Positions 5,993-63,411 of a stretch of 64,000 bases of DNA are shown here, in pieces. The first letter of the stretch is position 1. The number at the start of each line of letters is the position of its first letter. A program made the translations under genes and the position numbers. A model generated the notes under the pieces. The model had not been told where the DNA came from. It saw nothing but the letters and a program-made list of their open reading frames with translations, and ran no database searches. The stretch lies in the IMG/VR virus record IMGVR_UViG_3300037010_001702, positions 62,001 through 126,000 of that record; one strand, given 5' to 3'.

Positions 5993-6754
5993 ATGACGAC
6001 TTATACAGTTACCTGGTCAAGCAACAACGCTGAGGGTATTGCTGGGAAAACAGCAATTTCTATCCCGCAGCAAACGCTCGACACAACATCTACTACACTT
6101 ACCCTCACGGGAAAAGGCACCCAATACGGGCAAATTCAGCAGCAGAACTTCATCCGCTTGCTTGAGAACTTTGCTTCCGTCATTCCTCCTGTTAATCCTA
6201 CAGTGGGACAGCTTTGGTTCAATCCAACTGATGCTGCTCTTTACTGCTGCGCCGAGCTCGCTCAAACGCCAGGACAGACACTTTTCTATCAGTCAAATGG
6301 TAAGGGGTGGATCAATATAGGTAACATTGGTGCTACGTCTGGTCCAATTACGGTGCTCGCGTCCAGTATTATCAATGCACTTGGTTACACACCATACCCA
6401 ACTGAAACAAATCCTAATGGATACATTGCTTCAGTAAGCTCTACAAATATCACTAATGCTCTTGGCTACATCCCATATAATGCAGCCAATCCTAATAGCT
6501 ACATTAGTGCCGCTCAAGCTCCTGTGCAGTCAGTTGCTGGTAAGACGGGGGCAGTTGCCCTCGCTCAAGCTGACATTACTGGTCTTAAGACCACAGACAT
6601 GCCCACCTTCGCTGGAGTAAGCCTTAGAGGAGGTACTGCTGCCGCCATTAATCCTACAGATCCAGTTGATGGAGACATAAAGGTCGCTGGTTCAATCATT
6701 TCAATCTATGCTGCGGGTGGGTGGAACCAAGTATTCCCAGCGGTCTACTCTTAA
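5993..6754 (+). CDS. Short tail fibre / virion structural protein (paralog 1)
   Basis: YG...QQNFIRLLENFAS..PP.NPT.GQLWF anchor domain; two ALGY.PY repeats; VQSVAGKTGAV motif. Confidence 0.8.
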   Translation: MTTYTVTWSSNNAEGIAGKTAISIPQQTLDTTSTTLTLTGKGTQYGQIQQQNFIRLLENFASVIPPVNPTVGQLWFNPTDAALYCCAELAQTPGQTLFYQSNGKGWINIGNIGATSGPITVLASSIINALGYTPYPTETNPNGYIASVSSTNITNALGYIPYNAANPNSYISAAQAPVQSVAGKTGAVALAQADITGLKTTDMPTFAGVSLRGGTAAAINPTDPVDGDIKVAGSIISIYAAGGWNQVFPAVYS

Positions 6755-6766
6755 TTTGGAGACAAT

Positions 6767-8125
6767 ATGGCAGACACGATTTCATGGTCAAGCGGTGGTA
6801 CCGAGGGTATTCTTGGTAAGTCAACTATCACCATCCAAACAAAAAACGTAAACAACGAAGCATCCTCTCTTGCCCTTGTTGGGACTGGGGTTAAAAACTA
6901 TGGACCGATTGAACAGCAAAATATCATTCGTCTACTTGAGAATTTCGCATCCGCTAATCAACCAGCAAACCCAACCATTGGGCAGCTTTGGTTTAACCCA
7001 GTAGATGGTGTTCTTTATTTGTGCGTTGATCCACTACACGTTTCAAATCTAACCATTCACTACCCTGGAAATGGCATTGGCTGGGTTGACATCAGTAGCG
7101 CTCCAAGTTCATCATCGGTTATTTCAGCTCTTGGTTATACGCCATATAACGCAACGAATCCAAGTGGATATATCTCTGGTATTACTTCTGCCAATGTAAT
7201 TTCAGCTCTTGGCTACACACCATATCCAAGCACGAACCCGTACAACTACATCTCTAGCATTACCTACCAGAACGTTGTTACTGCTCTTGGTTTTACGCCA
7301 TACTCGGCTTCAAATCCAAACTCCTACATTTCAAGTAGCTCACCATCTAACATAATATCAGCACTGGGTTACACCCCTGTAAACAAAGCCGGTGATACGA
7401 TGACTGGCAATCTTGTTCTAAGTGCAAATCCAACAGCAGCCATGCATGCTGCCACTAAGCAGTACGTTGATGCTCATGGTGTAACAAGCGTTACTGTTGC
7501 TGGAGCTGCTGGAAGAATAACTGGTGGTGGCACAATTACATCAACTGGAACAGCTACTCTTGATCTCGCTGCCTCTGGGGTAGCTGCTGGCTACTACGGA
7601 ATGGCCAACATCAACGTTGATGCCTATGGTAGAATTACAAGTGCTGGAGCCGGAACTCTTACTGTTCAAGGTGTTGGTGCTCTTGCTGGTGGGGGTGTAA
7701 TTGGACAGGGTGGTACTGCCCAACTAAACATGGCCGCAATTCATGGTGGCGGAACATTTACCAATGCCACCGTTGTTCTTGACAGTTATGGTCGTGTAAC
7801 ATCTGCTGCATCAGGTGCCTCAGGAAGTGGTATTGGTGCTGGACAATCTTGGCATAACGTAAATGGTGCTCGCTCTTTCGGTACTGCATACTATAATCCT
7901 GCAAATGATGGCCGTCCTTGGATGGTTATCTACACCCCCGGTTCATCTGGTGGTCCATCTGGACAGTGCACTGCTGTTGTAAATGGACTTCAAGTCGCGG
8001 CAACCCACTCAGACACTACTAATGGTGGAACTTTCTATCCAATGTCATTTGTTGTTCCTGCGAATGGTTGGTACTATGTAACAAATGACCATAACAATAC
8101 GGCAAGCTGGGTTGAACTTTATTAA
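6767..8125 (+). CDS. Tail fibre protein (paralog 2)
   Basis: Same anchor domain; four ALG[YF]TP repeats; NKAGDTMTG, AATKQYVD, D.YGR.T fibre motifs; GQSW...SFVVP...WVEL tip. Confidence 0.85.
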   Translation: MADTISWSSGGTEGILGKSTITIQTKNVNNEASSLALVGTGVKNYGPIEQQNIIRLLENFASANQPANPTIGQLWFNPVDGVLYLCVDPLHVSNLTIHYPGNGIGWVDISSAPSSSSVISALGYTPYNATNPSGYISGITSANVISALGYTPYPSTNPYNYISSITYQNVVTALGFTPYSASNPNSYISSSSPSNIISALGYTPVNKAGDTMTGNLVLSANPTAAMHAATKQYVDAHGVTSVTVAGAAGRITGGGTITSTGTATLDLAASGVAAGYYGMANINVDAYGRITSAGAGTLTVQGVGALAGGGVIGQGGTAQLNMAAIHGGGTFTNATVVLDSYGRVTSAASGASGSGIGAGQSWHNVNGARSFGTAYYNPANDGRPWMVIYTPGSSGGPSGQCTAVVNGLQVAATHSDTTNGGTFYPMSFVVPANGWYYVTNDHNNTASWVELY

Positions 8126-8134
8126 GGACTAAAA

Positions 8135-8428
8135 ATGCCACACTACAAAGATAGCAACAACCAGGTGTACTGGCTTGATTCCATAGAGATGGAACATCTT
8201 CTTCCAGTAGATGCCGTTAACATTTCCGACAATGAAGTTGAAGTCATAAAGGCTCTTAAATTTCCCCCAAAAACTGGAAATGCTGCACTGCTTGAACAGA
8301 TAGGAATCATAGAAGCTTCAGTTACACCACGCCGATTAAGAGAAGCTGCTTTAACCGAAGCCGGAAAAGCTTGGCTTGCAGACGTGGATTCTCAAATTGC
8401 TGTGCTGAGAAACCAGCTGGTGAAATAA
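8135..8428 (+). CDS. Putative tail fibre assembly chaperone
   Basis: Directly after the fibre; C-terminal IE...TPRRLREAAL......L...D.QI..LR pattern. Confidence 0.65.
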   Translation: MPHYKDSNNQVYWLDSIEMEHLLPVDAVNISDNEVEVIKALKFPPKTGNAALLEQIGIIEASVTPRRLREAALTEAGKAWLADVDSQIAVLRNQLVK

Positions 8429-8477
8429 GGTTACCTAAAACTAATCGAAATTCTGTAACAAAGTAACCAACAAACTG

Positions 8478-8506
8478 TTTACATTCCTAAGAAATCAGGT
8501 TATAAT
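8478..8506 (+). promoter_or_regulatory. Early promoter for the RNA ligase N-half
   Basis: (G)TTTACA-N17-TATAAT. Confidence 0.8.
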
Positions 8507-8528
8507 AACCTATCTAAAGGAAAATAGT

Positions 8529-9116
8529 ATGTTAAAGATTACCGAAGTTGAAGAATTCCGTGAACTTGTAAAGTGCAAGGAAGAAATCCGTGAAGCCCAC
8601 ATCGGTCATGGCTGCACTTCCTTTTGCTACATGGTCTCTGGTCCAGATACCTTTGACTCGGCTGCTGCGCGTGAGTGTCGTGGTATCGTTTTTGACGGTC
8701 CAGATGTTGTTGGTCGTCCTCTTCATAAGTTCTTCAACGTGAATGAGCGTGAAGAAACCCTTCTAAAGAACTTGGATTGGTCAAAGGTTGTGCGAGTTAT
8801 GGATAAGCGAGATGGATGCTGTGACGAAGATACAGTGCTATTCACTATAGATGGCCCAAAGACCATTAAGGATGTGTGTGACTCCAATTACACAGGGTTG
8901 GTCATGGGCTGGAATCATGTCTTGAATGAAGTTCAGTGGACTCCTATTCTGGGTCATGAAGTTAAACCAAATAACAATGATTGGTATGAACTTGAAATGG
9001 AGGATGGAAGCAAGATCAAATTAACTGGAAACCACCTAGTATGGTGTATCAATCAAGAGAGATATGTTCGAGTTGATCAGCTCACAACACAGGATGAAGT
9101 TCAAAAACTGTACTGA
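8529..9116 (+). CDS. rnlA: T4 Rnl1-type RNA ligase N-extein (aa 1-96) fused to split intein N-fragment (aa 97-195)
   Basis: ECRGIVF and RPLHKFFNVNE Rnl1 motifs; motif I KRDG directly followed by intein block A CCDEDT and block B GSKIKLTGNHLVW. Confidence 0.92.
   Translation: MLKITEVEEFRELVKCKEEIREAHIGHGCTSFCYMVSGPDTFDSAAARECRGIVFDGPDVVGRPLHKFFNVNEREETLLKNLDWSKVVRVMDKRDGCCDEDTVLFTIDGPKTIKDVCDSNYTGLVMGWNHVLNEVQWTPILGHEVKPNNNDWYELEMEDGSKIKLTGNHLVWCINQERYVRVDQLTTQDEVQKLY
8817..9113 (+). mobile_element. Split intein N-fragment (IntN, 99 aa)
   Basis: Cys1 at 8817; TxxH; ends YVRVDQLTTQDEV as Hint N-domains do; no C-terminal HN. Confidence 0.9.
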
Positions 9117-10056
9117 GTAATGTGAGAATGAATTGTTCAAGTTCATTATCTGTTTTGGAGTTTATATCATTCTCCCAGATCGAGAGATATCGATATCCAG
9201 ATTCGATCGCAATATTCCGTTTCTTCAGATCTTTGTTCCAAATATCCTTGGCGGCGATTTTAGTTGTTTTGCCTGGAAAGTTTAACAGACTGTTTTCCGT
9301 GTAAAATTTAGGGTTAGCATGCCAGAAGTCTCCTTGAACTTCAAGAACAACATTATTGTTTATCAAAAAATCATATTGAAATCTTTTGATAAAAAATGAA
9401 TATTGAAATGGAACACCAAGGAAAGTTAAACAGTTAGCGACACGGGTTTCAAGTTTATTGATTTTAAAGTATCGTGGTAACGTTCCATTAGTGATCATTG
9501 TATTTTGTTTCTTTTGATGTATTATATACAGTTGTTCATCGGTGAGATTTTCGTATGGATTAACTCTTTTCTTACCATAATGTTCAAGATGAGTTTTAGT
9601 TATTTTGTCTTTGACCTCTGTAAGTTGAAACACATTAACAATGCCGTAACGTTCCTTAAGAGTTCTTTGTCTTGTAATATATCCAACTGAACCTTTAGAC
9701 AGAGCATTTGTAGTGCCATATTTTGTCAAACATGTTTCTCGATATTTCTTTTTAATTGAGTTAGTATTGTTCGCTGTCTCAAGATTTCGTTTGGGAATTC
9801 TATGCATATCTAAGACAAAGTTCAATACCTTAAAATTGACATTAAACATTTTGTAAAAATCAACTGATGAAAGTTCATCTTCAACATACAGCTTATATAT
9901 CAATTCTTTATCAGATAGATTGATCTTTGAATGATTATACGTCAACACATGTAGTTTAAACTCATTTTTGGGATAATCCTTACCACAAGTTTTATAGTGT
10001 GGCAATTTTGATGCAGTTCCACAGATTGGGCATGTTAGTGGTTTATATGGTTTCAT
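9082..10056 (-). mobile_element. Free-standing Vsr-like/DUF559 (PD-(D/E)XK) homing endonuclease
   Basis: CPICG Zn motif; ETCLTKYG/TLKERYG/THLEHYG repeats; KLE...YDF......EVQGDFWH...IWEND nuclease; AT-rich; ATG 10056 preferred because it lies downstream of the late promoter. Confidence 0.85.
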
Positions 10057-10060
10057 ACTA

Positions 10061-10099
10061 TGTATTTCCACGATAGATTTATGATATAATCTATTTATA
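10061..10099. promoter_or_regulatory. Back-to-back promoters: + strand extended -10 TGATATAAT (10082-10090) and - strand late TATAAATA (10092-10099)
   Basis: Motifs read directly from the spacer between the endonuclease and the IntC gene. Confidence 0.65.
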
Positions 10100-10146
10100 G
10101 ACAAACGCAATATAATCACGTTTTTCCATCAGCATGGTACTACTAT

Positions 10147-10248
10147 ATGAAAATTCTAAATATCTCCAAAGTTAAAAGTCAATCTGACCGATATGACATT
10201 CAGACTGGTACTAAAAACTTTTTTGCGAACGGTATTCTCGTCCATAAC
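10147..10248 (+). mobile_element. Split intein C-fragment (IntC, 34 aa)
   Basis: Blocks F/G ending His-Asn, Ser+1 at 10249. Confidence 0.9.
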
Positions 10249-11142
10249 TCATTGATTCATACTGTGAATACAGATCTGGGTGTTAAGCTAAAATCTAAGA
10301 AGACATTTAGCTCAGCCGTTGCACTAGCTGCTGAAAAGTGGATGTATGAGCAGCCTGGACATCATGTCCTGTCTTTTGTGAACTTTGTCACCGCTCAAAA
10401 TTTAACGGCGATCTTTGAATGGACTGCTCCTTCTGCTCGCATCGTTCTCTTCTACCCAGAAGCTGAACTACAATTGCTTCACATTCGCGATAACGTAACT
10501 GGTGTGTACATGGAATCTGAAGACCTTCATAAGTGGGCTGAAGAGTTCAACGTGAAGGTCGTTGAAGAAGTTGAGTTTGCTAATGTCTTCCCTTCTGAAG
10601 ATGCCAACTGGTATCCAGAAGACTACGAAGACGGTAAGTTCAAGCTTGCTGCATTTAACATGGAGCGTGCTAAGTGGCTACATGAAAATGTTGAAGGTGT
10701 AGAAGGTTGGGTATTTCAGTTTGAAGATGGAAACATGGTCAAGCTGAAGACCGACTGGTATATCAAGCGCCACCACGCTATGACATTCATTCGCGAACGC
10801 GATATTGCTCAGCTGGTTCTAGACGAGGGTCTGGATGACATGAAGGCAATGCTGGTTTCTGAAAACGTGAACATTGACCGTATCCTAGAGATCGAACAAA
10901 ATGTGGTTACTGAGCTGAATGTCCTGCGAAAGCTGGTTGATTCAACTGTAAAGGCATGTGAAGGCATGGATCGAAAGACCTTTGCTATCGCACATAACAG
11001 CCACAAGTACTTCTCTCTGCTGATGCGAGCATTTAGTGGGCAAGAACCTAACTACAAGGATTATTTTGAAAAGAATATCCTTAAGGAAAAGTACGGCCAG
11101 GCTCAAGTAGTCATGATGCCATCTATTGCTGAAGGAGATTGA
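10147..11142 (+). CDS. rnlA: Split intein C-fragment (aa 1-34) fused to the Rnl1 RNA ligase C-extein
   Basis: YDIQTGTKNFFANGILVHN|S, then Rnl1 motifs TAIFEWTAP..RIV, LLHIRDNVTG, EGWV, VKLKTDWY. Confidence 0.92.
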   Translation: MKILNISKVKSQSDRYDIQTGTKNFFANGILVHNSLIHTVNTDLGVKLKSKKTFSSAVALAAEKWMYEQPGHHVLSFVNFVTAQNLTAIFEWTAPSARIVLFYPEAELQLLHIRDNVTGVYMESEDLHKWAEEFNVKVVEEVEFANVFPSEDANWYPEDYEDGKFKLAAFNMERAKWLHENVEGVEGWVFQFEDGNMVKLKTDWYIKRHHAMTFIRERDIAQLVLDEGLDDMKAMLVSENVNIDRILEIEQNVVTELNVLRKLVDSTVKACEGMDRKTFAIAHNSHKYFSLLMRAFSGQEPNYKDYFEKNILKEKYGQAQVVMMPSIAEGD

Positions 11143-11216
11143 GATGCGAAAGTTAATGATGGATCGGATCGTGGAGCTGAAGCCGCTATAGCAATAGGAT
11201 AAGTAAAGGACTTGAT

Positions 11217-11597
11217 ATGAAGTTAACAGAAATAAAATACGAAGAAACATGCATTTTGTCTGAATCTGAAATAATGGAGATGGCAAGAATAAAGGAAGCA
11301 GATTCCGGTATTCCTGTTGTTATCTATGTATCAACAAAGCAGTCTGTTAAAGAACACCACGGCCCACGAATTAAAGTTTCAAATATAAAAACTTTTTCTG
11401 ATTCTGATAATTTTGCAATAGATATTTCTAAAAATCCAAGTCCTATTGCTGGAAAAGTTAAACTGAAAAATTCTGAAGTAGATGATATTTGTGATTGGAT
11501 AAAATTAAATTATGAGCCACTTATGAAGTATTGGAATGATGAATACACTAGCGATGCTATTTTCTTTACAGAAATTAAATCACTAAAGGCTTTATAA
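11217..11597 (+). CDS. Hypothetical protein, possibly DUF4160-like; putative head-packaged protein
   Basis: MKLTEI start; EMA.I....SGIPVVIYV...HGPRIKV; AT-rich. Confidence 0.55.
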   Translation: MKLTEIKYEETCILSESEIMEMARIKEADSGIPVVIYVSTKQSVKEHHGPRIKVSNIKTFSDSDNFAIDISKNPSPIAGKVKLKNSEVDDICDWIKLNYEPLMKYWNDEYTSDAIFFTEIKSLKAL

Positions 11598-11857
11598 TGG
11601 TTAAAGTTTATATTGAGATAGACGAGGGTTGGCGCTGGTGGCCAGTTACTGAACAAGATCCAGTGCATCAATATGGGCCTAAGTCAATGTCGATGGAAGT
11701 ACCGCAAGAGCTCTTAACTGAATATAACATTGCGAACACCTTATACCAGAACGTGCAGGAAAAGCTAGAAGCTCTTTATAGAGTGCAAGAAGGAATGAAC
11801 CCACATCCTAATCAAGTGGTTCCAGAATATACACTGTTGAAGGAGAAAACACCTTAA
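11597..11857 (+). CDS. Hypothetical protein
   Basis: 86 aa; TAATG coupling. Confidence 0.65.
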   Translation: MVKVYIEIDEGWRWWPVTEQDPVHQYGPKSMSMEVPQELLTEYNIANTLYQNVQEKLEALYRVQEGMNPHPNQVVPEYTLLKEKTP

Positions 11858-11908
11858 GTATATCTCTAGAAGATGGTATTCAAGCATCTATTTCAAAAGG
11901 ATAAACAT

Positions 11909-12967
11909 ATGAGAAAACTTGCAACAATTAGAAAAATTTCAAAACTATTACCAATTCCCGGCGCAGATGCAATTGAAGTTGCTGTTGTGGATGGGTGGGA
12001 AATAGTCGTGAAAAAAGGAGATTTTGAAGAAGATACTTTAATAGTGATGTGTGAAATCGATTGCTGGGTGCCACATGAGCTTGCTCCATTCCTGTCAAAG
12101 GGAAAGGAACCCCGGGTCTATGAAGGCATTAAGGGTGAGAAGCTTCGCACGGTAAAGTTGCGTGGTGCTCTGTCGCAGGGTCTTCTGCTTCCACTTTCTG
12201 TGCTTGGTAAGCCTGAAGAAGTCTTTTCTATTGGTGATGAATGCATTGGTACTGACGTGTCAGAACAACTTGGTATCATTAAGTGGGAACCAGTTCTTCC
12301 TGCTAATATGGCTGGACAAGTGAAGGGTCTGTTCCCTAGCTTCATTCGCAAGACTGATCAGGAGCGCTGCCAGAACATTGTCGATGAGATTTTCATTGAC
12401 AACAAGGATGCTCGCTACGAAGTTACTATCAAGCTTGATGGTTCTTCTATTACTACTTACAAGTTCCAGCAAGACACTGGTGTCTGCTCTCGTAACCTTG
12501 AACTGGAGATTAACGAAGAGAACAAGGACAACTCGTTTGTTAAGATGTTCCAGGGTTCTATGCTTCAGGCTGTTCTTGATAAGATGGGTAAGAACATTGC
12601 AGTTCAAGGTGAGCTGATGGGTCCTTGTATCCAAGGCAACCGTGAAAACTTCAAGGATACAAAGTTCTTTATCTTCGAAGCGCAGTTCATTGATGATCAG
12701 CGTAAGCTGACACCTGATGAAAGAAAGGCTCTGTTTGCTGAACTTATGGAATGCGGCGCAGATGCACATATTGTGAATCACGTGCCTATCCTACACTACA
12801 ATGTTACTCTTGCTGAGCTTGGCATCTTCAATGTTGAAGACCTTCTAAAGTTTGCTGATGGCCCGTCGATTAACAACCCTATTAGGGAAGGATTGGTGTT
12901 CAAGCGAATGGACGGTGGATTCTCGTTCAAGGCAATTTCGAATAAATTTTTGGAAAAGGAAAAATGA
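11909..12967 (+). CDS. RNA ligase, DRB0094/Rnl5 family
   Basis: MRKLATIRKI..L.PIPGAD.IE...VDGW.IVVKKG OB domain; KTDQERCQN, KLDGSS, QGELMG, REGLVFK, SFKAISN. Confidence 0.92.
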   Translation: MRKLATIRKISKLLPIPGADAIEVAVVDGWEIVVKKGDFEEDTLIVMCEIDCWVPHELAPFLSKGKEPRVYEGIKGEKLRTVKLRGALSQGLLLPLSVLGKPEEVFSIGDECIGTDVSEQLGIIKWEPVLPANMAGQVKGLFPSFIRKTDQERCQNIVDEIFIDNKDARYEVTIKLDGSSITTYKFQQDTGVCSRNLELEINEENKDNSFVKMFQGSMLQAVLDKMGKNIAVQGELMGPCIQGNRENFKDTKFFIFEAQFIDDQRKLTPDERKALFAELMECGADAHIVNHVPILHYNVTLAELGIFNVEDLLKFADGPSINNPIREGLVFKRMDGGFSFKAISNKFLEKEK

Positions 12968-46870: not shown

Positions 46871-49800
46871 TTAACTTAATGTGAGCCTGAACGGTACAGA
46901 AAGTGTCGTTTTGAATGTGAACGAATTTGCATCTGTAAGTTGCGGCATAGCTGGGAATACAATTGAGCTAGGAATTGGTGCATCGTAAACACCAGTTCCA
47001 GTGTAAACAACCTCACCAGAAGGTAGGGTGTTAGCGATGAGCTGCTCCAGGGAGATCGTTGGCGAACCGCTGTAGCTTCTGTTCTGAACTACAACCATGT
47101 ACTCGTCTGCTGCTTGAGTAACAACCATTCCTGTTGTCTGAACATTCATGTCAAAGAATAGAACAAACTTAGCTGCTACGAAGTCCAGGTCAGTGTCGTA
47201 TGGATATGAGTCATACGCGTATGCATCATAACCGGTTGTTGGATCTGGATCGATTGGACATTCACGTTCCATGATAGTGAGACCTTCAATGATTGCCGTG
47301 CTAGCTTGAACAGCCGTATCACCATCAACGTTGGGAACATCTCCAGTGCTTTGAGTAATAGAGATAGAAGGTCCAGGAGTTGGGTTGATGATTACCCAAT
47401 CGCTATCATTTCCAGTATACTCATAGTTTCCACTTCCCGCAGGAGACTCAACAATGCCAGTAACTATTCCAGTTGTAGAGTCATCGTAGGCAGTTGCACC
47501 ATAAGGAAGGACGTCATAGCCTCCCGTGCTAATAGAGGCTGCACCACCTTCGATAATATGTGCATTAACGATATCAACAAGTGAAATATCTTCAATAATG
47601 TCCAGATACTGAATAGGTTCATCCGCTATGTTAATGCTTGAGATGTCTTGGAAGTTTAGTCTAACACGAGCATAAGTTCTGAAATTTTCAGTAATCTTTA
47701 CTCGAATCTTCTGACCGTACGATTGGTCTGGAAGGAACATCAGTGAAAAGTTAGTACCAAATTTCAGGTACTGGGATACAAAAGCAGAATCAAGAACGAT
47801 TGTTGCTGATGCATTTCTGTTTGATGTTTCATAGCGAGGCTGGAGGATGTGGAATACCTTCACATCTGGATTGCTACCCAAGTAACCTTCAATGTAGGTA
47901 GCAAGATCAGAGAACTCAGCTGCAGACACCGGGACGTTGTTAGCTATGCGATCGTAGTACTTAAGTGTAATTGGGATCCAGTCATTTGAGTCTGGAGCAA
48001 GCTCGGGGAATAGTAGGTTAGCACCTTCAATTCTGAACTTAAAGGTGTCATTAGCTGCTTTGTCAATTATGAACTTATCTCTATCAGTTACGTTCTTGAA
48101 GATAACAGAACCATGACTGTGGTAGAGTGGAAATATTTCCTGGTTGAAGATGAGTGGAACAGTACATTCACCAACCTCAGCATCATAGCCATGAACCCAG
48201 TACTCGCTCTCATCATAGCCAACATCAGTTGTGTAGCTGTACATTGGAGCAAGGTAGATGTGAATGACATCACCAACTTGGTATGGAATTCCATTCGCCA
48301 TTGATGGAATCTTAAATGCTGCACGTCCATCGGTCCAAGGTGTGTCAATCTTTAATCCAGCCAGCTGACCATAAACGTTGCTGACAACGGTTGCTGTAGT
48401 ACTTGACACGAATGTAATCGTGTAAAAAGATGGCTCTGCTGAAGAGTGAGGAACAGGATCGATCTCTGGACCATTTATTCCTGCTGGAATAACAGCTGGC
48501 GGAGTGTAGGCAGCTGTAAGTGGAAGCGGAACAAAGTTGGTGAGGTCATATGGTGTACCGCCTCCACCAACGAACGTTCCATTACCGTATGCGATGCTGT
48601 TCAATCGACGACCACGGTAACGTGTCCAAGAGTAACCATCAATTGAAGATGAGACCCATCCATCAACATTATCAACACCAACAAATTTCCCAGCAGCGAA
48701 AATGATGTCGGAGAACGTACCATCATTGAAGACTGAAAGGTTAGCCCATGTTGACCCGTCAAGTGAACGAAGAATTGTCCCCCGATCACCGACAGCGATG
48801 AACATTCCAAGTGTTGCAGAATAGGTAACAGCTGAAAGATGATTGACTGTATTAGATGGAACTTGGACCCAGTCAATACGATTTACTGATGTTAGAATTG
48901 TTCCATGTTCACCCACAGCAACAAGAATGCTATTGCCAAAGGTGATGTCATTTAGATTTGTTGTTACTCCAGAGCTTTGAGTAGCCCAACCAGAACCATT
49001 TACGGTTGAGATTATTGTACCACTATTACCTACCACAACTGTCACGCTTAGCAGTGTGGATGGGTTTGACGGATCAGTAAGAGCGTTAGCTACTTGAACA
49101 AAGCCATTCAGATCTTCGTTAACGTGGGTGACTGCCTTTTCCCAGATGATTGCTGGACGAAGGGGAAGGTAAGGATATCCCGTGCTAGGATCAACAGCGA
49201 CGTGAATGTAATCAGCTGGATTCGCTGGATAACCAGTTGTGGAGTCTATCGCGTAAACAGCTGGATCTTGCACACCAACTCCGGCTGTTCCATTTGGACC
49301 AATGGTAACTAGGTAGTTTAGCTGAGTTGGGAATATTGTCGTGAGATCAGATGTCCACGTTACACCATCGGTAGACGTACCGACTATAGAGTCAGCCCCA
49401 GTGATGTAGAAAATTCCATTGTTGAATTCTACGGACTTTACTATCTGACCATTGGCGACTGAAATTTTCCAGTCGCCGTTGCTAGCATCTACTGATGTAA
49501 GGATGGTTGAATTGTAAGCGTGCGCAAAGTACTCAAGCTTTGGAATCTTAAGGCCAATCTTTCCATTCCAATACCACTCACCAATGACAGCATTTGGCTG
49601 CCAACCAGATATGCTACCGTAAACAAGATAGTGCTCAACCTTATCACCAACAGTAAAGTTAAATGAATCACCAGCGAAGTAACCATCGAGTGATGGGATA
49701 AGGGTGAATTGGATGTAATCATCTTTATAGCCACAGCCATCTGCTAGGTTGATAGTTAAGCCATTTGTTCCGTAAAGCTTCCCAGATGCATTGATAGCCT

Positions 49801-51022
49801 GAAGCGTGTATGTACCATCACCATTAAAGTTAATAGCCCAGTGAGTGGAAACGTTTGTGTAGCCAAGGGAGTCAGTATGTACCTCAATCGCTGGATATGT
49901 TGTGTTAGCTGGTCTAGCTGAACCGGGAGCAAAGGTAGGGACACCCACCATAGCAATAGGATTTGTCTTGATGAGTGACCACGATTCTTCTGGAGCTGTA
50001 GGAGCTACAACAATGCGAGAATGCGGTGTTAGCGTGATCGTATTGCCAACAAGCATCTCAGTAATACCGTCAAGAGCTGGTCCCATCTTAAATGAGATGA
50101 TTGGATTTACAAAGCTGCCATTCAAAACTGTGACGCCAATATCACCCGAGATTGATCCCTTTACATTTACGTAGTTGAGGTCATCAGGATTTGAAGCGAG
50201 AGTAACTGGGTCAACTATAATAGTTGAATTACCAAAATTGTCAACGCGCGTAAGAGTCCACTCTTCATAGTTGCCACCAGTAATTCCAGTTACTGTAGCA
50301 AATGGTTTAGTTACATCAGCATAGAGGAGAGTACCTTCATTCTCAGGGAATGCTGTAGCGTCCTTTACATTTCTATCCTTCCAGCGCTGAAGTGGTGCGC
50401 CGCTGCCCTGAATAACGTCAAATGAATAAACGCCACGAGACAAGAAGTAGTCAACCGTATCTTGGCAATGAAGTGTAGCATCATATGGGTTAGAATCTGC
50501 TGGTAGGTTAGGAGTGTAAAGTGGGTCCCGCTCGATGCGGTACTTGTACTGTCGTACGTCAGTGATGCCCGGCCCATCCCATCTAATGTTGCTGAATACC
50601 CTGTTTGTTGAGATGTTACCAATCCCAGGAATTTGCGTGTCATCATCAACTCTTCCAGGACGGCGAATGTTATCAATGCCAGCGTAAAACTCCGATCTGG
50701 ATGAGTGGCTAGCGAACTTATTAACCGATGTAAGTGGTACCTGCCACGTCGTTCTGCTACCATCGGACATGATGTCATGGTACCAAGATTGTGAACGACG
50801 AGCTCTAATCTTAGGTGTGCCTATCTTTGGAGATATATCTGCCCCAAGGATGGCAAGAAGCTGGTCATCCTCATCAATCTTTACGTTAACGTCATCATGA
50901 AAGATGTACTGTTCAACAATGGCGGAAAGCTTTACGTGATAAGGCTTTACGTCAAGTACGTAATTGATAAGACTATCAATGTGCCCACTGCTGACGGTTA
51001 AGTAATTGTTAGTAGAGCTCAT
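46871..51022 (-). CDS. Large baseplate-associated protein with Asp-box beta-propeller
   Basis: YV.DVKPYHVKL N-terminus; repeated S.DG..W motifs; YD..PYD repeats; start 51022 preferred to 51052. Confidence 0.75.
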   Translation of the reverse strand: MSSTNNYLTVSSGHIDSLINYVLDVKPYHVKLSAIVEQYIFHDDVNVKIDEDDQLLAILGADISPKIGTPKIRARRSQSWYHDIMSDGSRTTWQVPLTSVNKFASHSSRSEFYAGIDNIRRPGRVDDDTQIPGIGNISTNRVFSNIRWDGPGITDVRQYKYRIERDPLYTPNLPADSNPYDATLHCQDTVDYFLSRGVYSFDVIQGSGAPLQRWKDRNVKDATAFPENEGTLLYADVTKPFATVTGITGGNYEEWTLTRVDNFGNSTIIVDPVTLASNPDDLNYVNVKGSISGDIGVTVLNGSFVNPIISFKMGPALDGITEMLVGNTITLTPHSRIVVAPTAPEESWSLIKTNPIAMVGVPTFAPGSARPANTTYPAIEVHTDSLGYTNVSTHWAINFNGDGTYTLQAINASGKLYGTNGLTINLADGCGYKDDYIQFTLIPSLDGYFAGDSFNFTVGDKVEHYLVYGSISGWQPNAVIGEWYWNGKIGLKIPKLEYFAHAYNSTILTSVDASNGDWKISVANGQIVKSVEFNNGIFYITGADSIVGTSTDGVTWTSDLTTIFPTQLNYLVTIGPNGTAGVGVQDPAVYAIDSTTGYPANPADYIHVAVDPSTGYPYLPLRPAIIWEKAVTHVNEDLNGFVQVANALTDPSNPSTLLSVTVVVGNSGTIISTVNGSGWATQSSGVTTNLNDITFGNSILVAVGEHGTILTSVNRIDWVQVPSNTVNHLSAVTYSATLGMFIAVGDRGTILRSLDGSTWANLSVFNDGTFSDIIFAAGKFVGVDNVDGWVSSSIDGYSWTRYRGRRLNSIAYGNGTFVGGGGTPYDLTNFVPLPLTAAYTPPAVIPAGINGPEIDPVPHSSAEPSFYTITFVSSTTATVVSNVYGQLAGLKIDTPWTDGRAAFKIPSMANGIPYQVGDVIHIYLAPMYSYTTDVGYDESEYWVHGYDAEVGECTVPLIFNQEIFPLYHSHGSVIFKNVTDRDKFIIDKAANDTFKFRIEGANLLFPELAPDSNDWIPITLKYYDRIANNVPVSAAEFSDLATYIEGYLGSNPDVKVFHILQPRYETSNRNASATIVLDSAFVSQYLKFGTNFSLMFLPDQSYGQKIRVKITENFRTYARVRLNFQDISSINIADEPIQYLDIIEDISLVDIVNAHIIEGGAASISTGGYDVLPYGATAYDDSTTGIVTGIVESPAGSGNYEYTGNDSDWVIINPTPGPSISITQSTGDVPNVDGDTAVQASTAIIEGLTIMERECPIDPDPTTGYDAYAYDSYPYDTDLDFVAAKFVLFFDMNVQTTGMVVTQAADEYMVVVQNRSYSGSPTISLEQLIANTLPSGEVVYTGTGVYDAPIPSSIVFPAMPQLTDANSFTFKTTLSVPFRLTLS

Positions 51023-54000
51023 CTGCTTGCTCCACTTGGACAGTGCCGTCAACTACTGAGGTTGAGTTAACCGTTATAAACGAGGTCTTGAACATGTCGC
51101 TAAATTCATAGTTGTTAGAAAGGGCATCATCTAACGTGTCGAAAAATATTTCATTGATCTGAGCCGGACGAGCTGTATTCCAGATCAATGACATCGTAGC
51201 TCTTGCAGTTGCAGCATCCTTAAACCAGTTTTCACTGTCATCAAAGTTAAGAGCTGAGATGTAGTCAGGAATCTTCTTACCAGCAAGATTCAAAACAAGG
51301 TTTGTGTTCAGAATTGTGTTTGTGACTGAAGCTCTGACCAAAGATGTTTCTGCAAAAATCTGTCCAGGATTAAATCCATAACGTGTACGAGTATTATTTC
51401 GAGCATCATAATCAATTCTTGCTTTTGAAGGAAGTTGATTGCCAGCAGTATCAGTGCCAGCAACAGCATTAGTAAGAATTTCCCAAAGAGCTGCAGGAAT
51501 CTTGGATGATTGACCTTTACGGATAAGAGCCCATTCAGTGTGAATGTTCTTAAGGTTCAATTCTTCAGGATCATCGCGAAGTGTAAAATCTCTAAGCATG
51601 CGAAGCTTATAGGAATCATTCTTAGTGATCAAGGTATTCAATCCGGAGATCGCAAAAGAGTCATATGCTGCAGATGGAAGAACCGCACCTGGCTGAAGTC
51701 TAGAGAACACCGCATAGCGTGGTGCTCCAGATTTAAGAAGGGCTGCTGCTTGTGAAAGTGACATTGACTTGTTTGCTTGCGGAATGGTTTTGTCTTGAAC
51801 CCAGAAATAGTACTTCGTCCCAGTAATATTCCCCTGCTCATCTCTTACCTCAAGCTGGGTGTACTGGTAGTCTGACTTATACTGAACCTGAATAGTTACA
51901 TCATCGGCAACTGATGGATCAAAAGCTAATTCTTTAGCTGTCGGTTGATACGCTCTATAAAGAAGAGTAACTATGGTTCCTTCAGGTAACGGAGTATTTA
52001 CAAGTTCCACAACTTTTCCTGTAATCACGTATCCATCAGGATTTACCTGAATGCCATTTGAATAGATTGATAGGCGGTTAGGGTCAATGGTGTCGCTTAA
52101 CATGAACGAAACATTCGTTGTACCATTTGAAATAGCATCAAGCTTCTCATTTGACAAGTCAACCCAGTTATTCCAGGTTGATGAGTAGCGGCTTATGGTG
52201 ATACCAGACTTAAGGGTAAGTGTGGATGTCGAATCCTTCATCGCGGCAATTACCACTGGTGATGGAGCTACGACAACTGGGTCACCCATGACCGGCAGCC
52301 ACGCATTGTACGGTGAAAGAAGATCAGATGTAAGCTGAGCTTGAGTAGGAATTACCCACGTTCTCCAACCATAGTCAGAAGGAACGCTCAAGTAATCTCC
52401 AGAGTTGCTGAATAGCGTACCTGGATCACTTGGAAAATCAACAACTGTTGTGAAGTCAATAGCCTCACGGATAACAACGTCCTTAGCTGGAAGTGCCCCA
52501 AAGATTCCAATGATATCTGTTATGCTTGAATTAGTTGGGAAGGAAATTGTAAGAGCAAGACCGAATAAATCAAACTTGTAGGTGGCCTGGGTGTCAACAC
52601 CCAGAGGTGTGGTTACCTCTACGTCCTGGAAGAATCCAGTCGAATCAGTCATTCTAATGAAGCTGTCGTGTGATGTAAGTGCCACGGCACCAATGCGGGT
52701 ACCAAATACTCCACCGGTGATGATGCTTAGTGAGAGGTCAGCATTAAGAACTGGAGCAAGCGGGTCAGTAGAAGATCCAATGACATAAGACGTTACTGTA
52801 CCAATTGAAAGCTCACCAACAGGTTTAGAGTTGACGATATCCCAACCACTAAATCCACGTCCTGCAATCAAGTCAGCATCCGCGACGCGGCCTGTATCAG
52901 CGATAAGGATGTTACCGCTTCTCCAGATGTTTGTGTTCGTGTTGGTGATAAATGATGGGTGGCCATTAACAGCCCCAGTAGGAACATATGACCATGCAAT
53001 TGGCACTGCTGTTATCTTGCGATCGCGTGAGTAAAACTTAGAAAGAGCTACCTTACCTGAAAGCTTTACTGAGTCGTCAATTGATGAATCACCTTCTTGC
53101 GCTACTGCTTGTGCATTGTAGGCAGATGGGTGAACAGGGCTTTCTGTCCACTCGTAAAGATCGATGGATGCCCATTCAGCAAGTGAACCCCAGCGAGCAT
53201 GGCGCACATCACGACTTGGGAAAATTGTCGCGTCATAGTATGGAATGTAAGCAAGGTTACTCGTATCCCAGAACACTTGGCCTACTTCTCTAGCTCCCCA
53301 CGGCTTAAGGTGCTTGTACTGAACGTTGTCAGTTGTTTTCGTGGTGTAGTTGTAGTTAGCTGGATCTTCTCCAGATATCATGTTAACAACCTCAAGCGGT
53401 GCGTAGGCGTGAATACCAATAGCTGGGTGCCACAAACCAATTTCATCTACTAGGGTGTTCTCAATGTAATCGAACAGCTTAATAGGAGAGTGCTTGGTTG
53501 GATTGTTCCACGTGTAACCACTAACGGTGAATTGCCCAGGACCACTTACCCAGATCATGGAAGCATTAACAACTCTAAAGGTAGCTGCGGCTGTTGTCGT
53601 AATTGATGGGCTCATAGCATCACCGTTATGGTAGATGTTAGTAAGCTTGTAGTAGCCTGCGGCAGGTGCAGTAATGACTTCAGAAATAGGAGTTGCCTCA
53701 AACTTCATTCCAGTACCAAGGTCATCAATTGAGAACCAGTACGTGTCATCAGAGTTTTCAATCTGTGTGTAAAGTGGAAGTGGATCATGAATATCATCCA
53801 CCGAGTAGAACTGGAATCTAGAGAACTTTTGAGTAGCATCCTTTGGGTTGATCTTGATTTCTGGGAATGTGCGCTCACGAGCATCACCGAATGTTGCAAG
53901 CTTGTAAGCCCAGAACTCATCGGTAGAAGCATCAATGAATTTCTTGTAATTAACGAACGCGTTGATAGCCATGTTCGTTCCCTTAGCTTGAATCAAACCT

Positions 54001-59624: not shown

Positions 59625-59697
59625 ATGTGGGCGTACTCAAATAGTCTAAGAAGTTGATATGATATTTATCCAACTTCTCAAAGCCCCAAAAATGTGA

Positions 59698-62600: not shown

Positions 62601-63411
62601 TTGCAGTGGGAGATGCGATTAAGTAGTTAGTAAGGACCATTGACCCCTGCTTTACGAACCCCAAGAAGCCAGTAAAGTCAGAGCCATCACCCTTGCCATC
62701 AGAAGCGTAGATGATATTGAACTGAGCGTTAGCATCAGGAGCCCGCTCGAACGGACCATTTGAATCAATGTCAGCTGGAACAAGTTCCATTTGAACTTGA
62801 GAAGAATTACCTGCAACGCTGAAGGCGAGCACACCGTTTCTGAAAGCGTTAAGGTCATTGTTCAGCGTGTAGAGCTGCATCGACACGTCGCCAATCTGGA
62901 ACGCCTTTGATGGATTACCAAACTTAGATGTCAGGGCCTTGTTCATAACAAGGAAGAACTGTTCCTTCCAGTTACTGTTGTTTGGATCATTCCACGTGAT
63001 AGTGGTGTTAGCAAGGTTGTTACCAAGAGAGTCATAAACTGCTTCTGAAGTAACTACAGTGTTAATCTTTACCAAACCTCTACCAGGAATGTTACGCGCT
63101 GCTGTGTAGGAAATAAGTCTTGCGAGCTTAAGGACAGACTGCTTGCGCTGAGCTGTAGTGATGAAATTTTCATGTACCATCGTATCAACGCGGTATGCCA
63201 AAAGTTCAGCAACGTACGCGAACATTTCAAGAACAGCGATAAGTTCAGAGCTTTCAATGAAGTCATTGAAGTGTTCAGCGTGATAAATTTTCAGGTACTG
63301 AAGAAGAGATTCCTTAACAGTATCGTAATCATATGACGTGAAATTAATCTGAGAAAAAGCATCATAAACCTTATCCCATGCTTCAGCTGCGTATGTGGTT
63401 CTAATGGTCAT
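59698..63411 (-). CDS. Baseplate wedge protein (gp6-like)
   Basis: F.SYDYDT.K..L..Y......FNDFIESS....LE..AY, ENF..TA.R..SV, FGDG.F, Q.RMV..DY. Confidence 0.88.
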   Translation of the reverse strand: MTIRTTYAAEAWDKVYDAFSQINFTSYDYDTVKESLLQYLKIYHAEHFNDFIESSELIAVLEMFAYVAELLAYRVDTMVHENFITTAQRKQSVLKLARLISYTAARNIPGRGLVKINTVVTSEAVYDSLGNNLANTTITWNDPNNSNWKEQFFLVMNKALTSKFGNPSKAFQIGDVSMQLYTLNNDLNAFRNGVLAFSVAGNSSQVQMELVPADIDSNGPFERAPDANAQFNIIYASDGKGDGSDFTGFLGFVKQGSMVLTNYLIASPTANRRIELDPINVNDTDVWVYRVDDNGTILENWLRVEALNEQNLYFNDVTSTRKKYEISTLENDAIALLFGDGNFSDMPVGTFQFWTRVSLNQDVNIPKNTIVGQPVSFSYVNQVNVGQTFGFTFSLTAAIQNNAASENIEHIRQSAPSTYYSQNRMVNGQDYNTYPLKDSTILKLKTINRTFAGQPKYIEWNDSSLTYENVKLFGDDLNMSYSITADMVETRLAAKTLIDTFLEPLLQSNALLNCLVHIMATSAGSYGIISYPRRKFIEDNRQIYKNIDGTFVNPYGSLSTGNGSLNEKTAIQAAIDGHWYGDPLGYATINGIQHGIIADPILNPMDDGKLYLPSLPRTIDGLNTYPPGDTGSNLQALNAQESFGLRFNRFLAAFGGGTIALVDQAGVTAVSNATPSSAVGVDYYKHKVEVITIEMTSDATTFTVISSIRGKLHDYSLSAVNTRWSVQAGLTSYPFDFIITNDLANQFSAGDAFVIDISYTGTAWQALVRNFNPAGTAVYKANLNGWWELISHSELLAGGITSATELSTVQQANFDPNDSVNAWVFMVSRNINSTTGEVDSWSIYNRNMKIIAASTATKFWYNQDVQIIDSSTKKPLYDKIRVLRSNLDEFGKPLKKADIYDTVGFVYDENGVVNYNQIEVLPTDTITFAQAGDKTPDNILQFSAFSTDQFSFYLVNVSTAGMQSLGSQLTASEYTYTSAYDITDYANNYSYDAGTIVVPSLGYTFTFTAGAMLSDSQPTSGPLYQIMRLRTISTLDFMWQHFSPVTHLVDPSVTNIHDAFLMTRGYYNNVMDYVHGLSSVVPQPPTPLELRTSYGYLLANKMLSDTVVLHSGKIKLLFGALADQTLRAKFKVVKSATATFSDERIKAEIVTVIDTLFDIQNWDFGDSFYATELISLIHQKLSTQIASVVLVPLYSVNSFGSLFTINSGFDEILQSAATVNDIEIVTALTPTVLRQNR

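What the first reader, a model, noticed from the sequence alone, without database searches (positions are those of the whole stretch)
9082..10056. Antisense Vsr-like homing endonuclease occupies the intein split point
Seen: the only intact-looking homing endonuclease in the window lies on the opposite strand exactly where a cis-intein would carry its endonuclease domain. It is AT-rich and overlaps the IntN 3' end by 35 nt. It has a CPICG module, three KYG-type repeats and an E.QGDFWH...IWE nuclease. Inference: it invaded and split a mini-intein and now mobilises the IntN-endonuclease-IntC cassette by cutting intein-less rnlA alleles near the KxDGS codons.
Basis: partly seen in the sequence, partly recalled or inferred. 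Interest (0 to 1): 0.68.

Follow-up and report, generated by a model that had tools for sequence, protein, structure and literature searches.

The report
Backwards homing nuclease splits phage intein
A large environmental phage carries its RNA ligase 1 gene in two pieces joined by a split intein, with a selfish Vsr-type homing nuclease gene sitting backwards between the halves; this is a new, widespread opposite-strand version of the known "fractured gene" layout.

Summary
The T4-type RNA ligase 1 gene (rnlA) is cut after motif I (KRDG|S) into two ORFs. One is N-extein+IntN (8529..9116, +). The other is IntC+C-extein (10147..11142, +). Between them, on the minus strand, lies an intact 324-aa gene (9082..10056), AT-rich and overlapping the IntN 3' end by 35 nt.

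Its C-terminal domain is an EDxHD/Vsr-like nuclease. The catalytic residues are invariant in 29 homologues, and the model matches I-Bth0305I and E. coli Vsr.

The 1432-bp cassette behaves as a mobile unit:
- Ten distinct loci share the same antisense layout, with nuclease identity down to 33%.
- Intein-bearing alleles are scattered in the extein tree.
- The cassette is 86-97% identical to one whose exteins are only about 56% identical.
- Empty sites lack exactly the intein codons, including in a related contig in the same metagenomes.
- A contiguous mini-intein occupies the same site in a distant ligase.

This is the "fractured gene" architecture of Dassa et al. 2009, with three differences. 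The nuclease is antisense, the host gene is new, and a T4-type late promoter (TATAAATA) upstream of the nuclease is conserved.

Cleavage, trans-splicing and expression were not tested. Verdict: a new variant of a known kind, of moderate interest.

The parts
8478..8506 (+). Candidate sigma-70-type promoter (TTTACA-17-TATAAT) upstream of the rnlA N-half. An AAGGA ribosome-binding site lies 8 nt before the ATG.
   Evidence: Consensus scan gave 11 of 12 matches; sequence read. This is a consensus match only and function was not shown.
8529..8816 (+). RnlA N-extein, 96 aa, ending in motif I ..MDKRDG
   Evidence: Pfam RNA_lig_T4_1 profile positions 1-55. It is 92% identical to the N part of the uninterrupted RnlA of L002.
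8817..9116 (+). IntN: 99 aa (CCDEDTVL...TGNH...QDEVQKLY) plus stop
   Evidence: Weak Intein_splicing and Hint hits. It is 51% identical to the N part of the contiguous mini-intein of L004. The closest solved intein is NrdJ-1, 8ubs.
8817..10248 (.). The whole mobile cassette (IntN, antisense nuclease gene, promoter region, IntC), 1432 bp
   Evidence: A related contig in three runs skips exactly this stretch. Empty and occupied syntenic pairs (L034/L024, L035/L036) differ by exactly the equivalent stretch.
9082..10056 (-). Homing endonuclease gene, 324 aa, EDxHD/Vsr-like family
   Evidence: PHROG homing endonuclease families and Pfam DUF7487. Relatives are annotated as VSR endonuclease. dN/dS is 0.10-0.20. 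AF2 model has pLDDT 85.9.
9112..9414 (-). Nuclease domain, about residues 215-315, with E239, D243, H246, D276 and W294-E295
   Evidence: These residues are invariant or nearly so in 29 homologues. Foldseek matched 3r3p (I-Bth0305I catalytic domain, TM by target 0.69-0.74, prob 1.0) and 1vsr/1cw0 (Vsr, 0.52-0.60).
9487..9729 (-). Three helical (K/R/H)YG repeats, about residues 110-190; presumed DNA-binding region
   Evidence: Pfam DUF7487 hit at residues 151-211. Conserved YG..N motifs. Predicted as helices. DNA binding is inferred.
9967..10056 (-). N-terminal C-x2-C...H-x3-C module (probable zinc knuckle)
   Evidence: C9 and C12 are nearly invariant. Predicted as a small beta hairpin plus helix. 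Metal binding is inferred.
9082..9116 (.). 35-nt tail-to-tail overlap of the nuclease gene and the IntN gene
   Evidence: Tail-to-tail overlaps of 17-89 nt are seen in the related loci whose gene calls were compared. The overlapped nuclease tail has low pLDDT.
10092..10099 (-). TATAAATA (T4-type late promoter motif), 36 nt upstream of the nuclease ATG
   Evidence: Nine copies in the window against 2.3 expected; all lie on the coding strand of the surrounding gene block. It is invariant in six aligned loci and present exactly in 8 of 10. Promoter activity was not shown.
10082..10116 (+). TGaTATAAT (10082..10090) and TATAAT (10111..10116): candidate -10 boxes facing the IntC gene
   Evidence: Read from the sequence. 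The first box is kept in 4 of 6 aligned loci. This is inference only.
10147..10248 (+). IntC: 34 aa (MKILNISKVKSQSDRYDIQTGTKNFFANGILVHN)
   Evidence: Hit to the end of the Intein_splicing profile, positions 122-155. It is 64% identical to L004's mini-intein C part. The IntN+IntC complex model scored 0.81 against a best control of 0.01.
10249..11142 (+). RnlA C-extein, 297 aa plus stop, starting SLIH
   Evidence: Pfam RNA_lig_T4_1 profile positions 63-227 and T4_Rnl1_C. PHROG 562 at 8e-51.

Best explanation
This is a "fractured" rnlA gene. A class-1 split intein interrupts T4-type RNA ligase 1 three residues after the catalytic lysine (KRDG|S). A free-standing EDxHD (Vsr-like) homing endonuclease gene lies at the split point on the opposite strand.

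Proposed working:
1. The two halves are translated separately. IntN and IntC associate and trans-splice, restoring ..KRDG-SLIH.. and so an active ligase.
2. The nuclease is made from its own conserved T4-type late promoter, reading away from the IntC gene and converging on the IntN gene.
3. In a mixed infection the nuclease cuts an intein-less rnlA at or next to the KxDG|S codons. The occupied allele is immune because 1.4 kb separate the two half-sites.
4. Recombinational repair copies the whole 1432-bp cassette into the cut allele.

Shown here: the anatomy, family membership of the nuclease domain, purifying selection, precise presence or absence, and horizontal movement of the cassette as a unit. 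Inferred: trans-splicing, promoter use, cleavage and its position.

The composite arose once, long ago, and has since spread among phage rnlA genes. This phage acquired it ready-made.
For: Anatomy.

Nuclease family:
- Relatives are annotated as VSR endonucleases, including the one in the split-intein DNA polymerase of Aeromonas phage Aes508.
- Some homologues carry Pfam Vsr PF03852.
- E239, D243, H246 and D276 are invariant.
- The model matches 3r3p and 1vsr.

Real gene: dN/dS 0.10-0.20.

Intein:
- A contiguous mini-intein sits at the same site in L004.
- The closest solved intein is NrdJ-1.
- IntN+IntC complex score 0.81, best control 0.01. This mark was reached by 51 of 78 solved complexes and 2 of 108 mismatched pairs. 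Runs agree in at least 95% of contacts and the partner's pLDDT is at least 78. Similar complexes are solved, so the pass may be from memory.

Mobility:
- All nine nuclease homologues whose context was looked up (33-86% identical) sit antisense in a split rnlA; a further locus (L036) was found through its C-half.
- Window against L028: IntN 93%, IntC 97% and nuclease 86% identical, but exteins 56-57%. Cassette dS is 0.1-0.37 while extein dS is saturated.
- The window's exteins are closest to intein-less alleles (L002: 92% and 66%).
- Of 120 RnlA relatives, 110 are uninterrupted and 8 carry IntC.
- Intein-bearing alleles need 9 changes on the extein tree (starred branches force at least 6) and are no more clustered than shuffles. 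Sister pairs with and without the cassette are 88-93% identical.
- The syntenic pair L024/L034 differs by exactly the intein codons.
- A related contig in three metagenome runs that also hold this phage joins 8817 to 10255 and reads KRDG|SLIH.
- The cassette is AT-rich relative to the exteins in all six loci.

Promoter.
Against: - No experiment: cleavage, target site, splicing and transcription are all untested, and no RNA run holds the locus.
- No clear co-conversion tract was found in the flanks. L024/L034 shows none. The window shows only a hint in C-extein residues 1-45.
- No strong Shine-Dalgarno sequence precedes the IntC ATG.
- The 5' hairpin reported for other fractured genes is not significant here (z = -1.35).
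- One related nuclease gene is frameshifted (L027). Copies do decay, so this copy's activity cannot be assumed.
- Sporadic distribution could in part reflect precise loss rather than gain.
Confidence: 0.8

Rival explanations
1. Domesticated relic. The split intein is now a fixed, vertically inherited part of rnlA, and the antisense nuclease is inactive or serves some other role. The cassette no longer moves.
For: One related copy is frameshifted (L027). Homing cycles predict decay after fixation (PMC8966425; bioRxiv 10.1101/2025.01.02.630785). No activity data exist.
Against: The ORF is intact with all catalytic residues. dN/dS is 0.10-0.20. The cassette is far younger than the exteins it sits in. 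The distribution is sporadic, with near-identical empty sisters. An empty allele is present in the same samples.
Confidence: 0.1
2. Independent passenger. The nuclease is a free-standing homing endonuclease that merely landed in the intein. It targets a different sequence, or promotes its own spread without the intein, as in intronless or collaborative homing. The intein halves are then carried only by linkage.
For: Free-standing EDxHD, GIY-YIG and HNH genes are common beside rnlA in relatives (L002, L003, L038). The target site was not determined.
Against: All nine relatives whose context was looked up, down to 33% identity, sit in the same place in the same gene and the same orientation. Presence or absence always involves exactly the intein boundaries, never the nuclease gene alone. 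No locus with IntN and IntC adjacent but without the nuclease gene was seen among the rnlA loci examined.
Confidence: 0.07
3. Artefact. The antisense ORF is a chance open frame, or the inversion is a misassembly of a normal same-strand fractured gene.
For: AT-rich DNA gives long chance ORFs. The source is a metagenome assembly.
Against: The ORF has family hits, invariant catalytic residues and purifying selection. Contigs from four separate runs lie colinear on the stretch; single contigs in X1-X3 cover 8000/8153..10316-10318 without a mismatch, and X4's covers 8173..9951. Ten loci from separate samples share the layout.
Confidence: 0.01

Closest known systems
[quoted passage not shown] 2009, PMC2677866). 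Annotated example: Aeromonas phage Aes508 split DNA polymerase.
   Same: - The host gene is broken in two at a conserved motif.
- IntN and IntC are fused to the two halves.
- A free-standing Vsr-like nuclease gene lies at the canonical endonuclease insertion point.
- The context is a phage.
- A TATAAATA late-promoter element lies upstream of the nuclease gene.
- The nuclease gene overlaps a neighbouring intein half.
- The closest solved intein is NrdJ-1, one of that paper's inteins.
   Different: - In all 26 loci of that paper the three ORFs are on the same strand, as in Aes508. Here the nuclease gene is on the opposite strand.
- The overlap is therefore tail to tail with IntN, not with the downstream IntC.
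- The host, T4-type RNA ligase 1, is not among the host types listed there.
- No significant 5' hairpin was found.
I-Bth0305I, prototype of the EDxHD homing endonuclease family (Taylor et al. 2011, PMC3239194; PDB 3r3p)
   Same: The C-terminal Vsr-like nuclease fold and the E, D, H, D catalytic residues match. The N-terminal region is helical and presumed to bind DNA.
   Different: I-Bth0305I is encoded in a group I intron of recA and has two NUMOD2 motifs. The protein here has a Cys/His knuckle and three DUF7487-type YG repeats. No sequence-level hit to 3r3p was found at E of 1 or less. Dimerisation, the roughly 60-bp footprint and the 2-nt 5' overhang are known only for I-Bth0305I.
Antisense VSR-like or LAGLIDADG endonuclease genes inside contiguous inteins of actinobacteriophages (Gosselin, Arsenault and Gogarten, bioRxiv 10.1101/2025.01.02.630785; Gorbalenya 1998 as cited there)
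   Same: An intein-associated nuclease gene is read from the strand opposite to the intein. It is interpreted as the result of a free-standing endonuclease gene invading an intein.
   Different: Those inteins stay open in the sense frame and are cis-splicing. Their hosts are DNA polymerase, minor capsid protein, terminase and thymidylate synthase. Here the sense frame is closed, the intein is split, and the host is rnlA. The preprint predicts split forms as a likely outcome but does not describe one with an antisense nuclease.
Same-strand fractured RNA ligases of the PF09414 family
   Same: The intein halves are related (IntN 31-44%, IntC 53-56% identical) and so are the nucleases (25-33%).
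   Different: The ligase family and insertion sites differ (KTDExR|C and KLDGEN|C). The nuclease gene is on the same strand. These nucleases fall outside the antisense-rnlA group in the tree.

Membership tests
EDxHD / Vsr-like homing endonucleases | Vsr-type nuclease fold in the C-terminal domain | tested here: met
   The AF2 model (pLDDT 85.9) matches 3r3p chains A and B (TM by target 0.69-0.74, prob 1.0) and 1vsr/1cw0 (0.52-0.60).
EDxHD / Vsr-like homing endonucleases | Composite motif E, D, x, H, D of catalytic residues | tested here: met
   E239, D243, H246 and D276 are invariant in 29 homologues. The motif is as defined in PMC3239194.
EDxHD / Vsr-like homing endonucleases | Site-specific double-strand cleavage of the empty allele next to the insertion site | not testable with these tools
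   This needs an in vitro cleavage assay.
EDxHD / Vsr-like homing endonucleases | Residence in a self-splicing element, with sporadic and horizontally transferred distribution | tested here: met
Class 1 split intein | Block A Cys1, block B TxxH, block F, block G HN, and a nucleophile at +1 | tested here: met
   C97 (CCDEDT), LTGNH, RYDIQTGTKNFFANG, ILVHN|S, read. Weak Intein_splicing hits cover both ends of the profile.
Class 1 split intein | The two halves are separate polypeptides that associate | tested here: inconclusive
   Separate ORFs are shown. The complex model scored 0.81 against a best control of 0.01. That mark was reached by 51 of 78 solved complexes and 2 of 108 mismatches. Similar complexes are solved, so the pass may be from memory. 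This is a prediction, not a measurement.
Class 1 split intein | Protein trans-splicing that ligates the exteins | not testable with these tools
   This needs co-expression and mass or gel analysis.
Fractured gene (Dassa et al. 2009) | A conserved enzyme gene broken in two, both parts kept in the original order and orientation, with split-intein halves at the break | tested here: met
Fractured gene (Dassa et al. 2009) | A free-standing endonuclease gene between the intein halves | tested here: met
Fractured gene (Dassa et al. 2009) | All three coding regions on the same strand (as described for all 26 loci) | tested here: not met
   The nuclease gene is on the minus strand and the halves are on the plus strand. 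This is why the locus is filed as a variant.
T4 RNA ligase 1 (Rnl1/RnlA) | Nucleotidyl-transferase domain with motif I KxDG, plus the Rnl1-specific C-terminal domain | tested here: met
   Pfam RNA_lig_T4_1 runs across the two halves and T4_Rnl1_C is in the C half. Uninterrupted homologues read MDKRDGSMIH.

The most novel reading that the evidence does not exclude
The opposite-strand orientation is selected rather than accidental. On this reading the cassette carries a compact two-way promoter module. TATAAATA faces the nuclease gene, and a TGnTATAAT -10 box immediately beside it faces the IntC half. The module uncouples late nuclease expression from early ligase expression, supplies transcription for the orphaned C half, and lets the converging transcripts damp each other. 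That would explain why this one lineage has held the layout while its nucleases diverged to 33% identity and it spread through phage rnlA genes. Its relatives in other RNA ligases kept the same-strand form.
Probability: 0.25. Interest if true: 0.6.

Novelty: new variant of a known kind. Interest (0 to 1): 0.5.

Why it matters
- It adds a third layout to the known ways a homing endonuclease can associate with an intein. The known ones are in-frame, same-strand free-standing within a split intein, and antisense within a contiguous intein. The new one is antisense within a split intein, and it is a stable, widespread lineage rather than a one-off.
- Contiguous, split/antisense and split/same-strand relatives were all found among phage RNA ligases. 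This gives a natural series for testing how endonuclease invasion creates split inteins, the "gene-breaking" model of Dassa et al.
- It names RNA ligase 1, a tRNA-repair enzyme, as a new intein host.
- It offers a new family of naturally split, NrdJ-1-related inteins (99 + 34 aa, Cys1, Ser+1) that could be tried as protein-ligation tools.
- It offers an untested EDxHD nuclease with a defined candidate target.

Tried and rejected
- **Near-identical DNA in the phage collection:** none found.
- **Sequence search of the nuclease against solved structures:** only a chance RNase HII hit at E 0.26. The relationship to 3r3p and Vsr needed a fold comparison.
- **Co-conversion tracts:** at protein level, the window's C-extein residues 1-45 look closer to intein-bearing alleles than to L002. 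DNA near the junction is too diverged to confirm this. The L024/L034 pair shows no dip in flank identity next to the junction. I make no claim from this.
- **Regulatory 5' hairpin as in Dassa et al.:** a 7-bp stem exists, but the fold is not better than shuffles (z = -1.35).
- **Pseudopalindrome at the empty site, as for I-Bth0305I:** GGNTCNATGATCC can be nearly palindromic. The real empty sites match only partly, by eye. Not pursued.
- **Terminators:** none found between the halves.
- **RNA evidence:** no RNA run holds the locus.
- **Foldseek top hits to Toxoplasma mitoribosomal proteins:** rmsd 22-24 Å. I take these as a loose resemblance of a helical region followed by a Vsr-like nuclease domain, not as kinship.
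- **Not used:** the large representative protein search, because family scans and the word search settled the protein.
- **Left out:** The N and C exteins were analysed separately, and the extein tree uses the C part only.
Full report
**What is there**

The window is part of a 239-kb virus record, estimated 67% complete, from sediment and microbial-mat metagenomes. It also appears as an 88-kb IMG/VR contig. The neighbourhood holds tail-fibre-like genes upstream. Downstream lies a replication block with DNA polymerase, exonuclease, primase and helicase.

From 1 to about 36300, every ORF of 120 aa or more that does not lie inside a longer + strand ORF is on the + strand, with one exception: the ORF at 9082..10119. 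Three ORFs make up the feature:

| ORF | Coordinates | Content |
|---|---|---|
| N half | 8529..9116 (+) | 96 aa of RNA ligase ending ..VMDKRDG, then 99 aa beginning CCDEDTVL and containing LTGNH |
| Nuclease | 9082..10056 (-) | 324 aa from the ATG used by all homologues |
| C half | 10147..11142 (+) | 34 aa ending ..KNFFANGILVHN, then 297 aa of RNA ligase beginning SLIH |

Pfam places both ligase parts in RNA_lig_T4_1, at profile positions 1-55 and 63-227. The Rnl1-specific C-terminal domain is also present. Weak Intein_splicing hits cover the two ends of that profile. PHROGs agrees.

The nuclease gene and the IntN gene overlap tail to tail by 35 nt. GC falls from 44-46% in the exteins to 32% in the nuclease gene.

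**The nuclease**

- It hits Pfam DUF7487 and PHROG homing-endonuclease families.
- Its relatives in deposited phage genomes are annotated as VSR endonucleases. One lies between the intein halves of the split DNA polymerase of Aeromonas phage Aes508.
- A word search found 37 homologues. Several carry Pfam Vsr and several are named G:T-mismatch endonuclease by their source.
- In an alignment of 29 homologues, E239, D243, H246 and D276 are invariant. These form the EDxHD motif of Taylor et al. 2011 (PMC3239194). W245, N248, P249, W273 and W294 are also invariant. C9 and C12 of the N-terminal knuckle are nearly so.
- An AlphaFold2 model (mean pLDDT 85.9) matches the I-Bth0305I catalytic domain (3r3p, TM by target 0.69-0.74) and E. 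coli Vsr (1vsr and 1cw0, 0.52-0.60).
- Between the window and two relatives, dN/dS is 0.10-0.20. This is similar to the intein, at 0.08-0.11.

It is a real, selected protein-coding gene of the EDxHD family.

**The intein**

- A distant RNA_lig_T4_1 ligase in locus L004 carries a contiguous 126-aa mini-intein at the same place (..KLDG|CCDGDT...GILVHN|STL..). It is 51% identical to IntN and 64% identical to IntC.
- Aligned to that mini-intein, the break in the window falls between ..QDEV and ..NISKVKS. This is between blocks B and F, where nested endonuclease domains normally sit.
- The closest solved intein is NrdJ-1, one of the split inteins of the original fractured-gene paper.
- A complex model of IntN with IntC scored 0.81 against a best control of 0.01. 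That mark was reached by 51 of 78 solved complexes and 2 of 108 mismatched pairs. The runs agree in at least 95% of contacts, and the partner's pLDDT is at least 78. Similar complexes have been solved, so the pass shows likeness rather than proof.
- The insertion lies three residues after the motif I lysine. Neither half alone should therefore be an active ligase (established knowledge of nucleotidyl transferases; inference here).

**Evidence that the cassette moves as a unit**

1. *Shared layout.* I looked up the genomic context of nine nuclease homologues, from 86% down to 33% identity. All nine lie antisense between an rnlA N half with IntN and an IntC with the rnlA C half, in different phage backgrounds. 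With the window and L036, this makes ten distinct loci.
2. *Cassette younger than its host gene.* Against L028 the window's IntN, IntC and nuclease are 93, 97 and 86% identical, while the exteins are 57 and 56%. Cassette dS is 0.10-0.37. Extein dS is saturated, at 54-56% nucleotide identity. The window's exteins are instead closest to uninterrupted alleles such as L002 (92% and 66%).
3. *Scattered distribution.* Of the 120 best RnlA relatives, 110 are uninterrupted and 8 start with IntC. On a tree of the C-extein, the intein-bearing alleles need nine changes of state. Well-supported branches force at least six, and the alleles are no more clustered than shuffled labels. Three intein-bearing alleles have intein-free sisters that are 88-93% identical. 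This was the quick tree; the careful search did not finish.
4. *Precise empty sites.* L024 (occupied) and L034 (empty) are syntenic, with flanks 81-84% identical. They differ by 1423 bp that run exactly from the intein's Cys codon to its Asn codon. L036 and L035 behave likewise.
5. *Empty allele in the same samples.* In three of the four metagenome runs that hold this phage, another contig joins position 8817 to 10255 with five other letters between. It reads ..GATGGA|TCACTAATTCAT.., that is KRDG|SLIH. What it skips is exactly 8817..10248. That contig differs at about 15% of nearby positions. It is therefore a related co-occurring phage, not a variant of this strain.
6. *Foreign composition.* In all six loci compared, the cassette is markedly more AT-rich than the exteins. 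In L028, for example, the nuclease gene is 36% GC and the exteins 58%.

Together these are the usual signatures of an active or recently active homing element.

**Age and origin**

In a tree of the nucleases, the eight copies known to be antisense in rnlA fall on one side of a branch with 100% SH-aLRT support. Seven unexamined homologues fall with them. The same-strand copies fall on the other side. One origin of the antisense layout is therefore sufficient.

The more distant nuclease relatives (25-33% identical) sit with related intein halves in PF09414-type RNA ligases. There they are on the same strand as the host gene, at the sites KTDExR|C and KLDGEN|C.

The window's own second RNA ligase (11873..12967) has the first of these sites uninterrupted (KTDQER|CQNIV).

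So the splitting event was old and did not occur in this genome. Whether the L004-type mini-intein is the ancestor or a derivative is not resolved.

**Expression signals**

- TATAAATA, the T4-type late promoter motif, occurs nine times in the window against 2.3 expected. Every copy lies on the coding strand of the gene block around it.
- One copy is on the minus strand at 10092..10099, 36 nt upstream of the nuclease ATG.
- It is invariant in the six aligned antisense loci and exact in 8 of 10.
- Dassa et al. reported the same element upstream of many fractured-gene nucleases.
- Immediately beside it, on the + strand, are TGaTATAAT (10082..10090) and TATAAT (10111..10116), facing the IntC gene. 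The first is kept in four of six loci.
- A sigma-70-like promoter (11 of 12 matches) and an AAGGA ribosome-binding site precede the N half.

These are motif matches, not evidence of function. No terminator lies between the halves. The small hairpin upstream of the nuclease gene is not significant. The IntC ATG lacks a clear Shine-Dalgarno sequence.

**Comparison with what is known**

The architecture is that of the fractured genes of Dassa et al. 2009 (PMC2677866). [quoted passage not shown] The listed hosts are gp41, IMPDH, DnaE, NrdA, NrdJ, DNA ligase and terminase. It states that all three coding regions lie on the same strand. The annotated Aes508 example also has all three on one strand.

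A 2025 preprint (10.1101/2025.01.02.630785) reports antisense VSR-like and LAGLIDADG nuclease genes inside contiguous actinophage inteins. It suggests split inteins as a likely outcome of such invasions.

I found no paper describing an intein in rnlA, nor a split intein with an antisense nuclease gene. The library searched is not complete, so this absence is weak evidence.

I therefore file the finding as a new variant of a known kind. The parts and logic are the same. The orientation and host gene are new, and the variant forms a coherent, widespread lineage.

**Limits**

Nothing here shows cleavage, splicing or transcription. The target site is inferred from where the cassette sits and from I-Bth0305I, which cuts next to its intron insertion site. 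The claim that this is the only intact homing endonuclease of any family in the window was not checked exhaustively.

Noticed in passing
window 11873..12967 (+): A second RNA ligase (PHA02142 OB-fold plus RNA_ligase PF09414; PHROG 968) lies 0.7 kb downstream. Its KTDQER|CQNIV site is uninterrupted. In relatives L011, L013 and L014 the same site carries a same-strand split intein with a related Vsr-like nuclease gene.
   Followed up: partly
window 1741, 4494, 5909, 10092(-), 25325, 26099, 28801, 29718, 43947(-): TATAAATA occurs nine times against 2.3 expected. Every copy lies on the coding strand of the gene block around it, and most sit just upstream of an ORF start. This suggests the phage uses T4-type late promoters.
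   Followed up: partly
Read laying on window 8000..11600 (runs X2, X3, X4): A related phage with an intein-less rnlA (about 85% identical near the junction, reading KRDG|SLIH) co-occurs with this phage in three metagenome runs, at similar or higher contig depth. A potential homing recipient is thus present in the same community.
   Followed up: partly
window 10249..10260: The window and the co-occurring empty allele read S-L-I-H after the junction. All other RnlA relatives inspected read S-M-I-H. Whether this affects nuclease recognition is unknown.
   Followed up: no
L027 4001..4983; L036 1427..2016: Signs of decay in relatives. The nuclease gene of L027 is frameshifted near its 3' end (ORFs of 281 and 57 aa). 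In L036 the N-extein and IntN are called as two ORFs (89 and 106 aa), which could be a frameshift or a sequencing error.
   Followed up: partly
L002 6191..7009; L003 638..1438 (-); L038 263..865: Other homing-endonuclease-like genes sit beside rnlA in relatives: GIY-YIG-like with repeated NUMOD-like motifs, and HNH_3. The rnlA neighbourhood looks like a hot spot for such genes.
   Followed up: no
window 5993..6754 and 6767..8125 (+): Two adjacent paralogous tail-fibre-like genes share an N-terminal region and carry repeated ..ALGYTPY.. motifs. The L002 counterpart instead carries a long collagen-like G-x-y run.
   Followed up: no
nuclease model m4e008cc4f544: The top whole-chain Foldseek hits are Toxoplasma mitoribosomal proteins, with the human FASTKD4 FAST/RAP module further down the list, all at very high rmsd. 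They share a helical region followed by a Vsr-like (RAP-type) nuclease domain. This is probably an architectural resemblance only.
   Followed up: no
window 46871..63411 (-): Three very large ORFs in a row (1393, 2871 and 1237 aa) on the minus strand were not examined.
   Followed up: no
L005 3379..5538; L006 2134..4599: IntC-like ends (..NFFANGILVHN|C) also occur in contiguous inteins of a DegT-type aminotransferase-like gene and a terminase-like gene. This intein block G is widespread beyond ligases.
   Followed up: no
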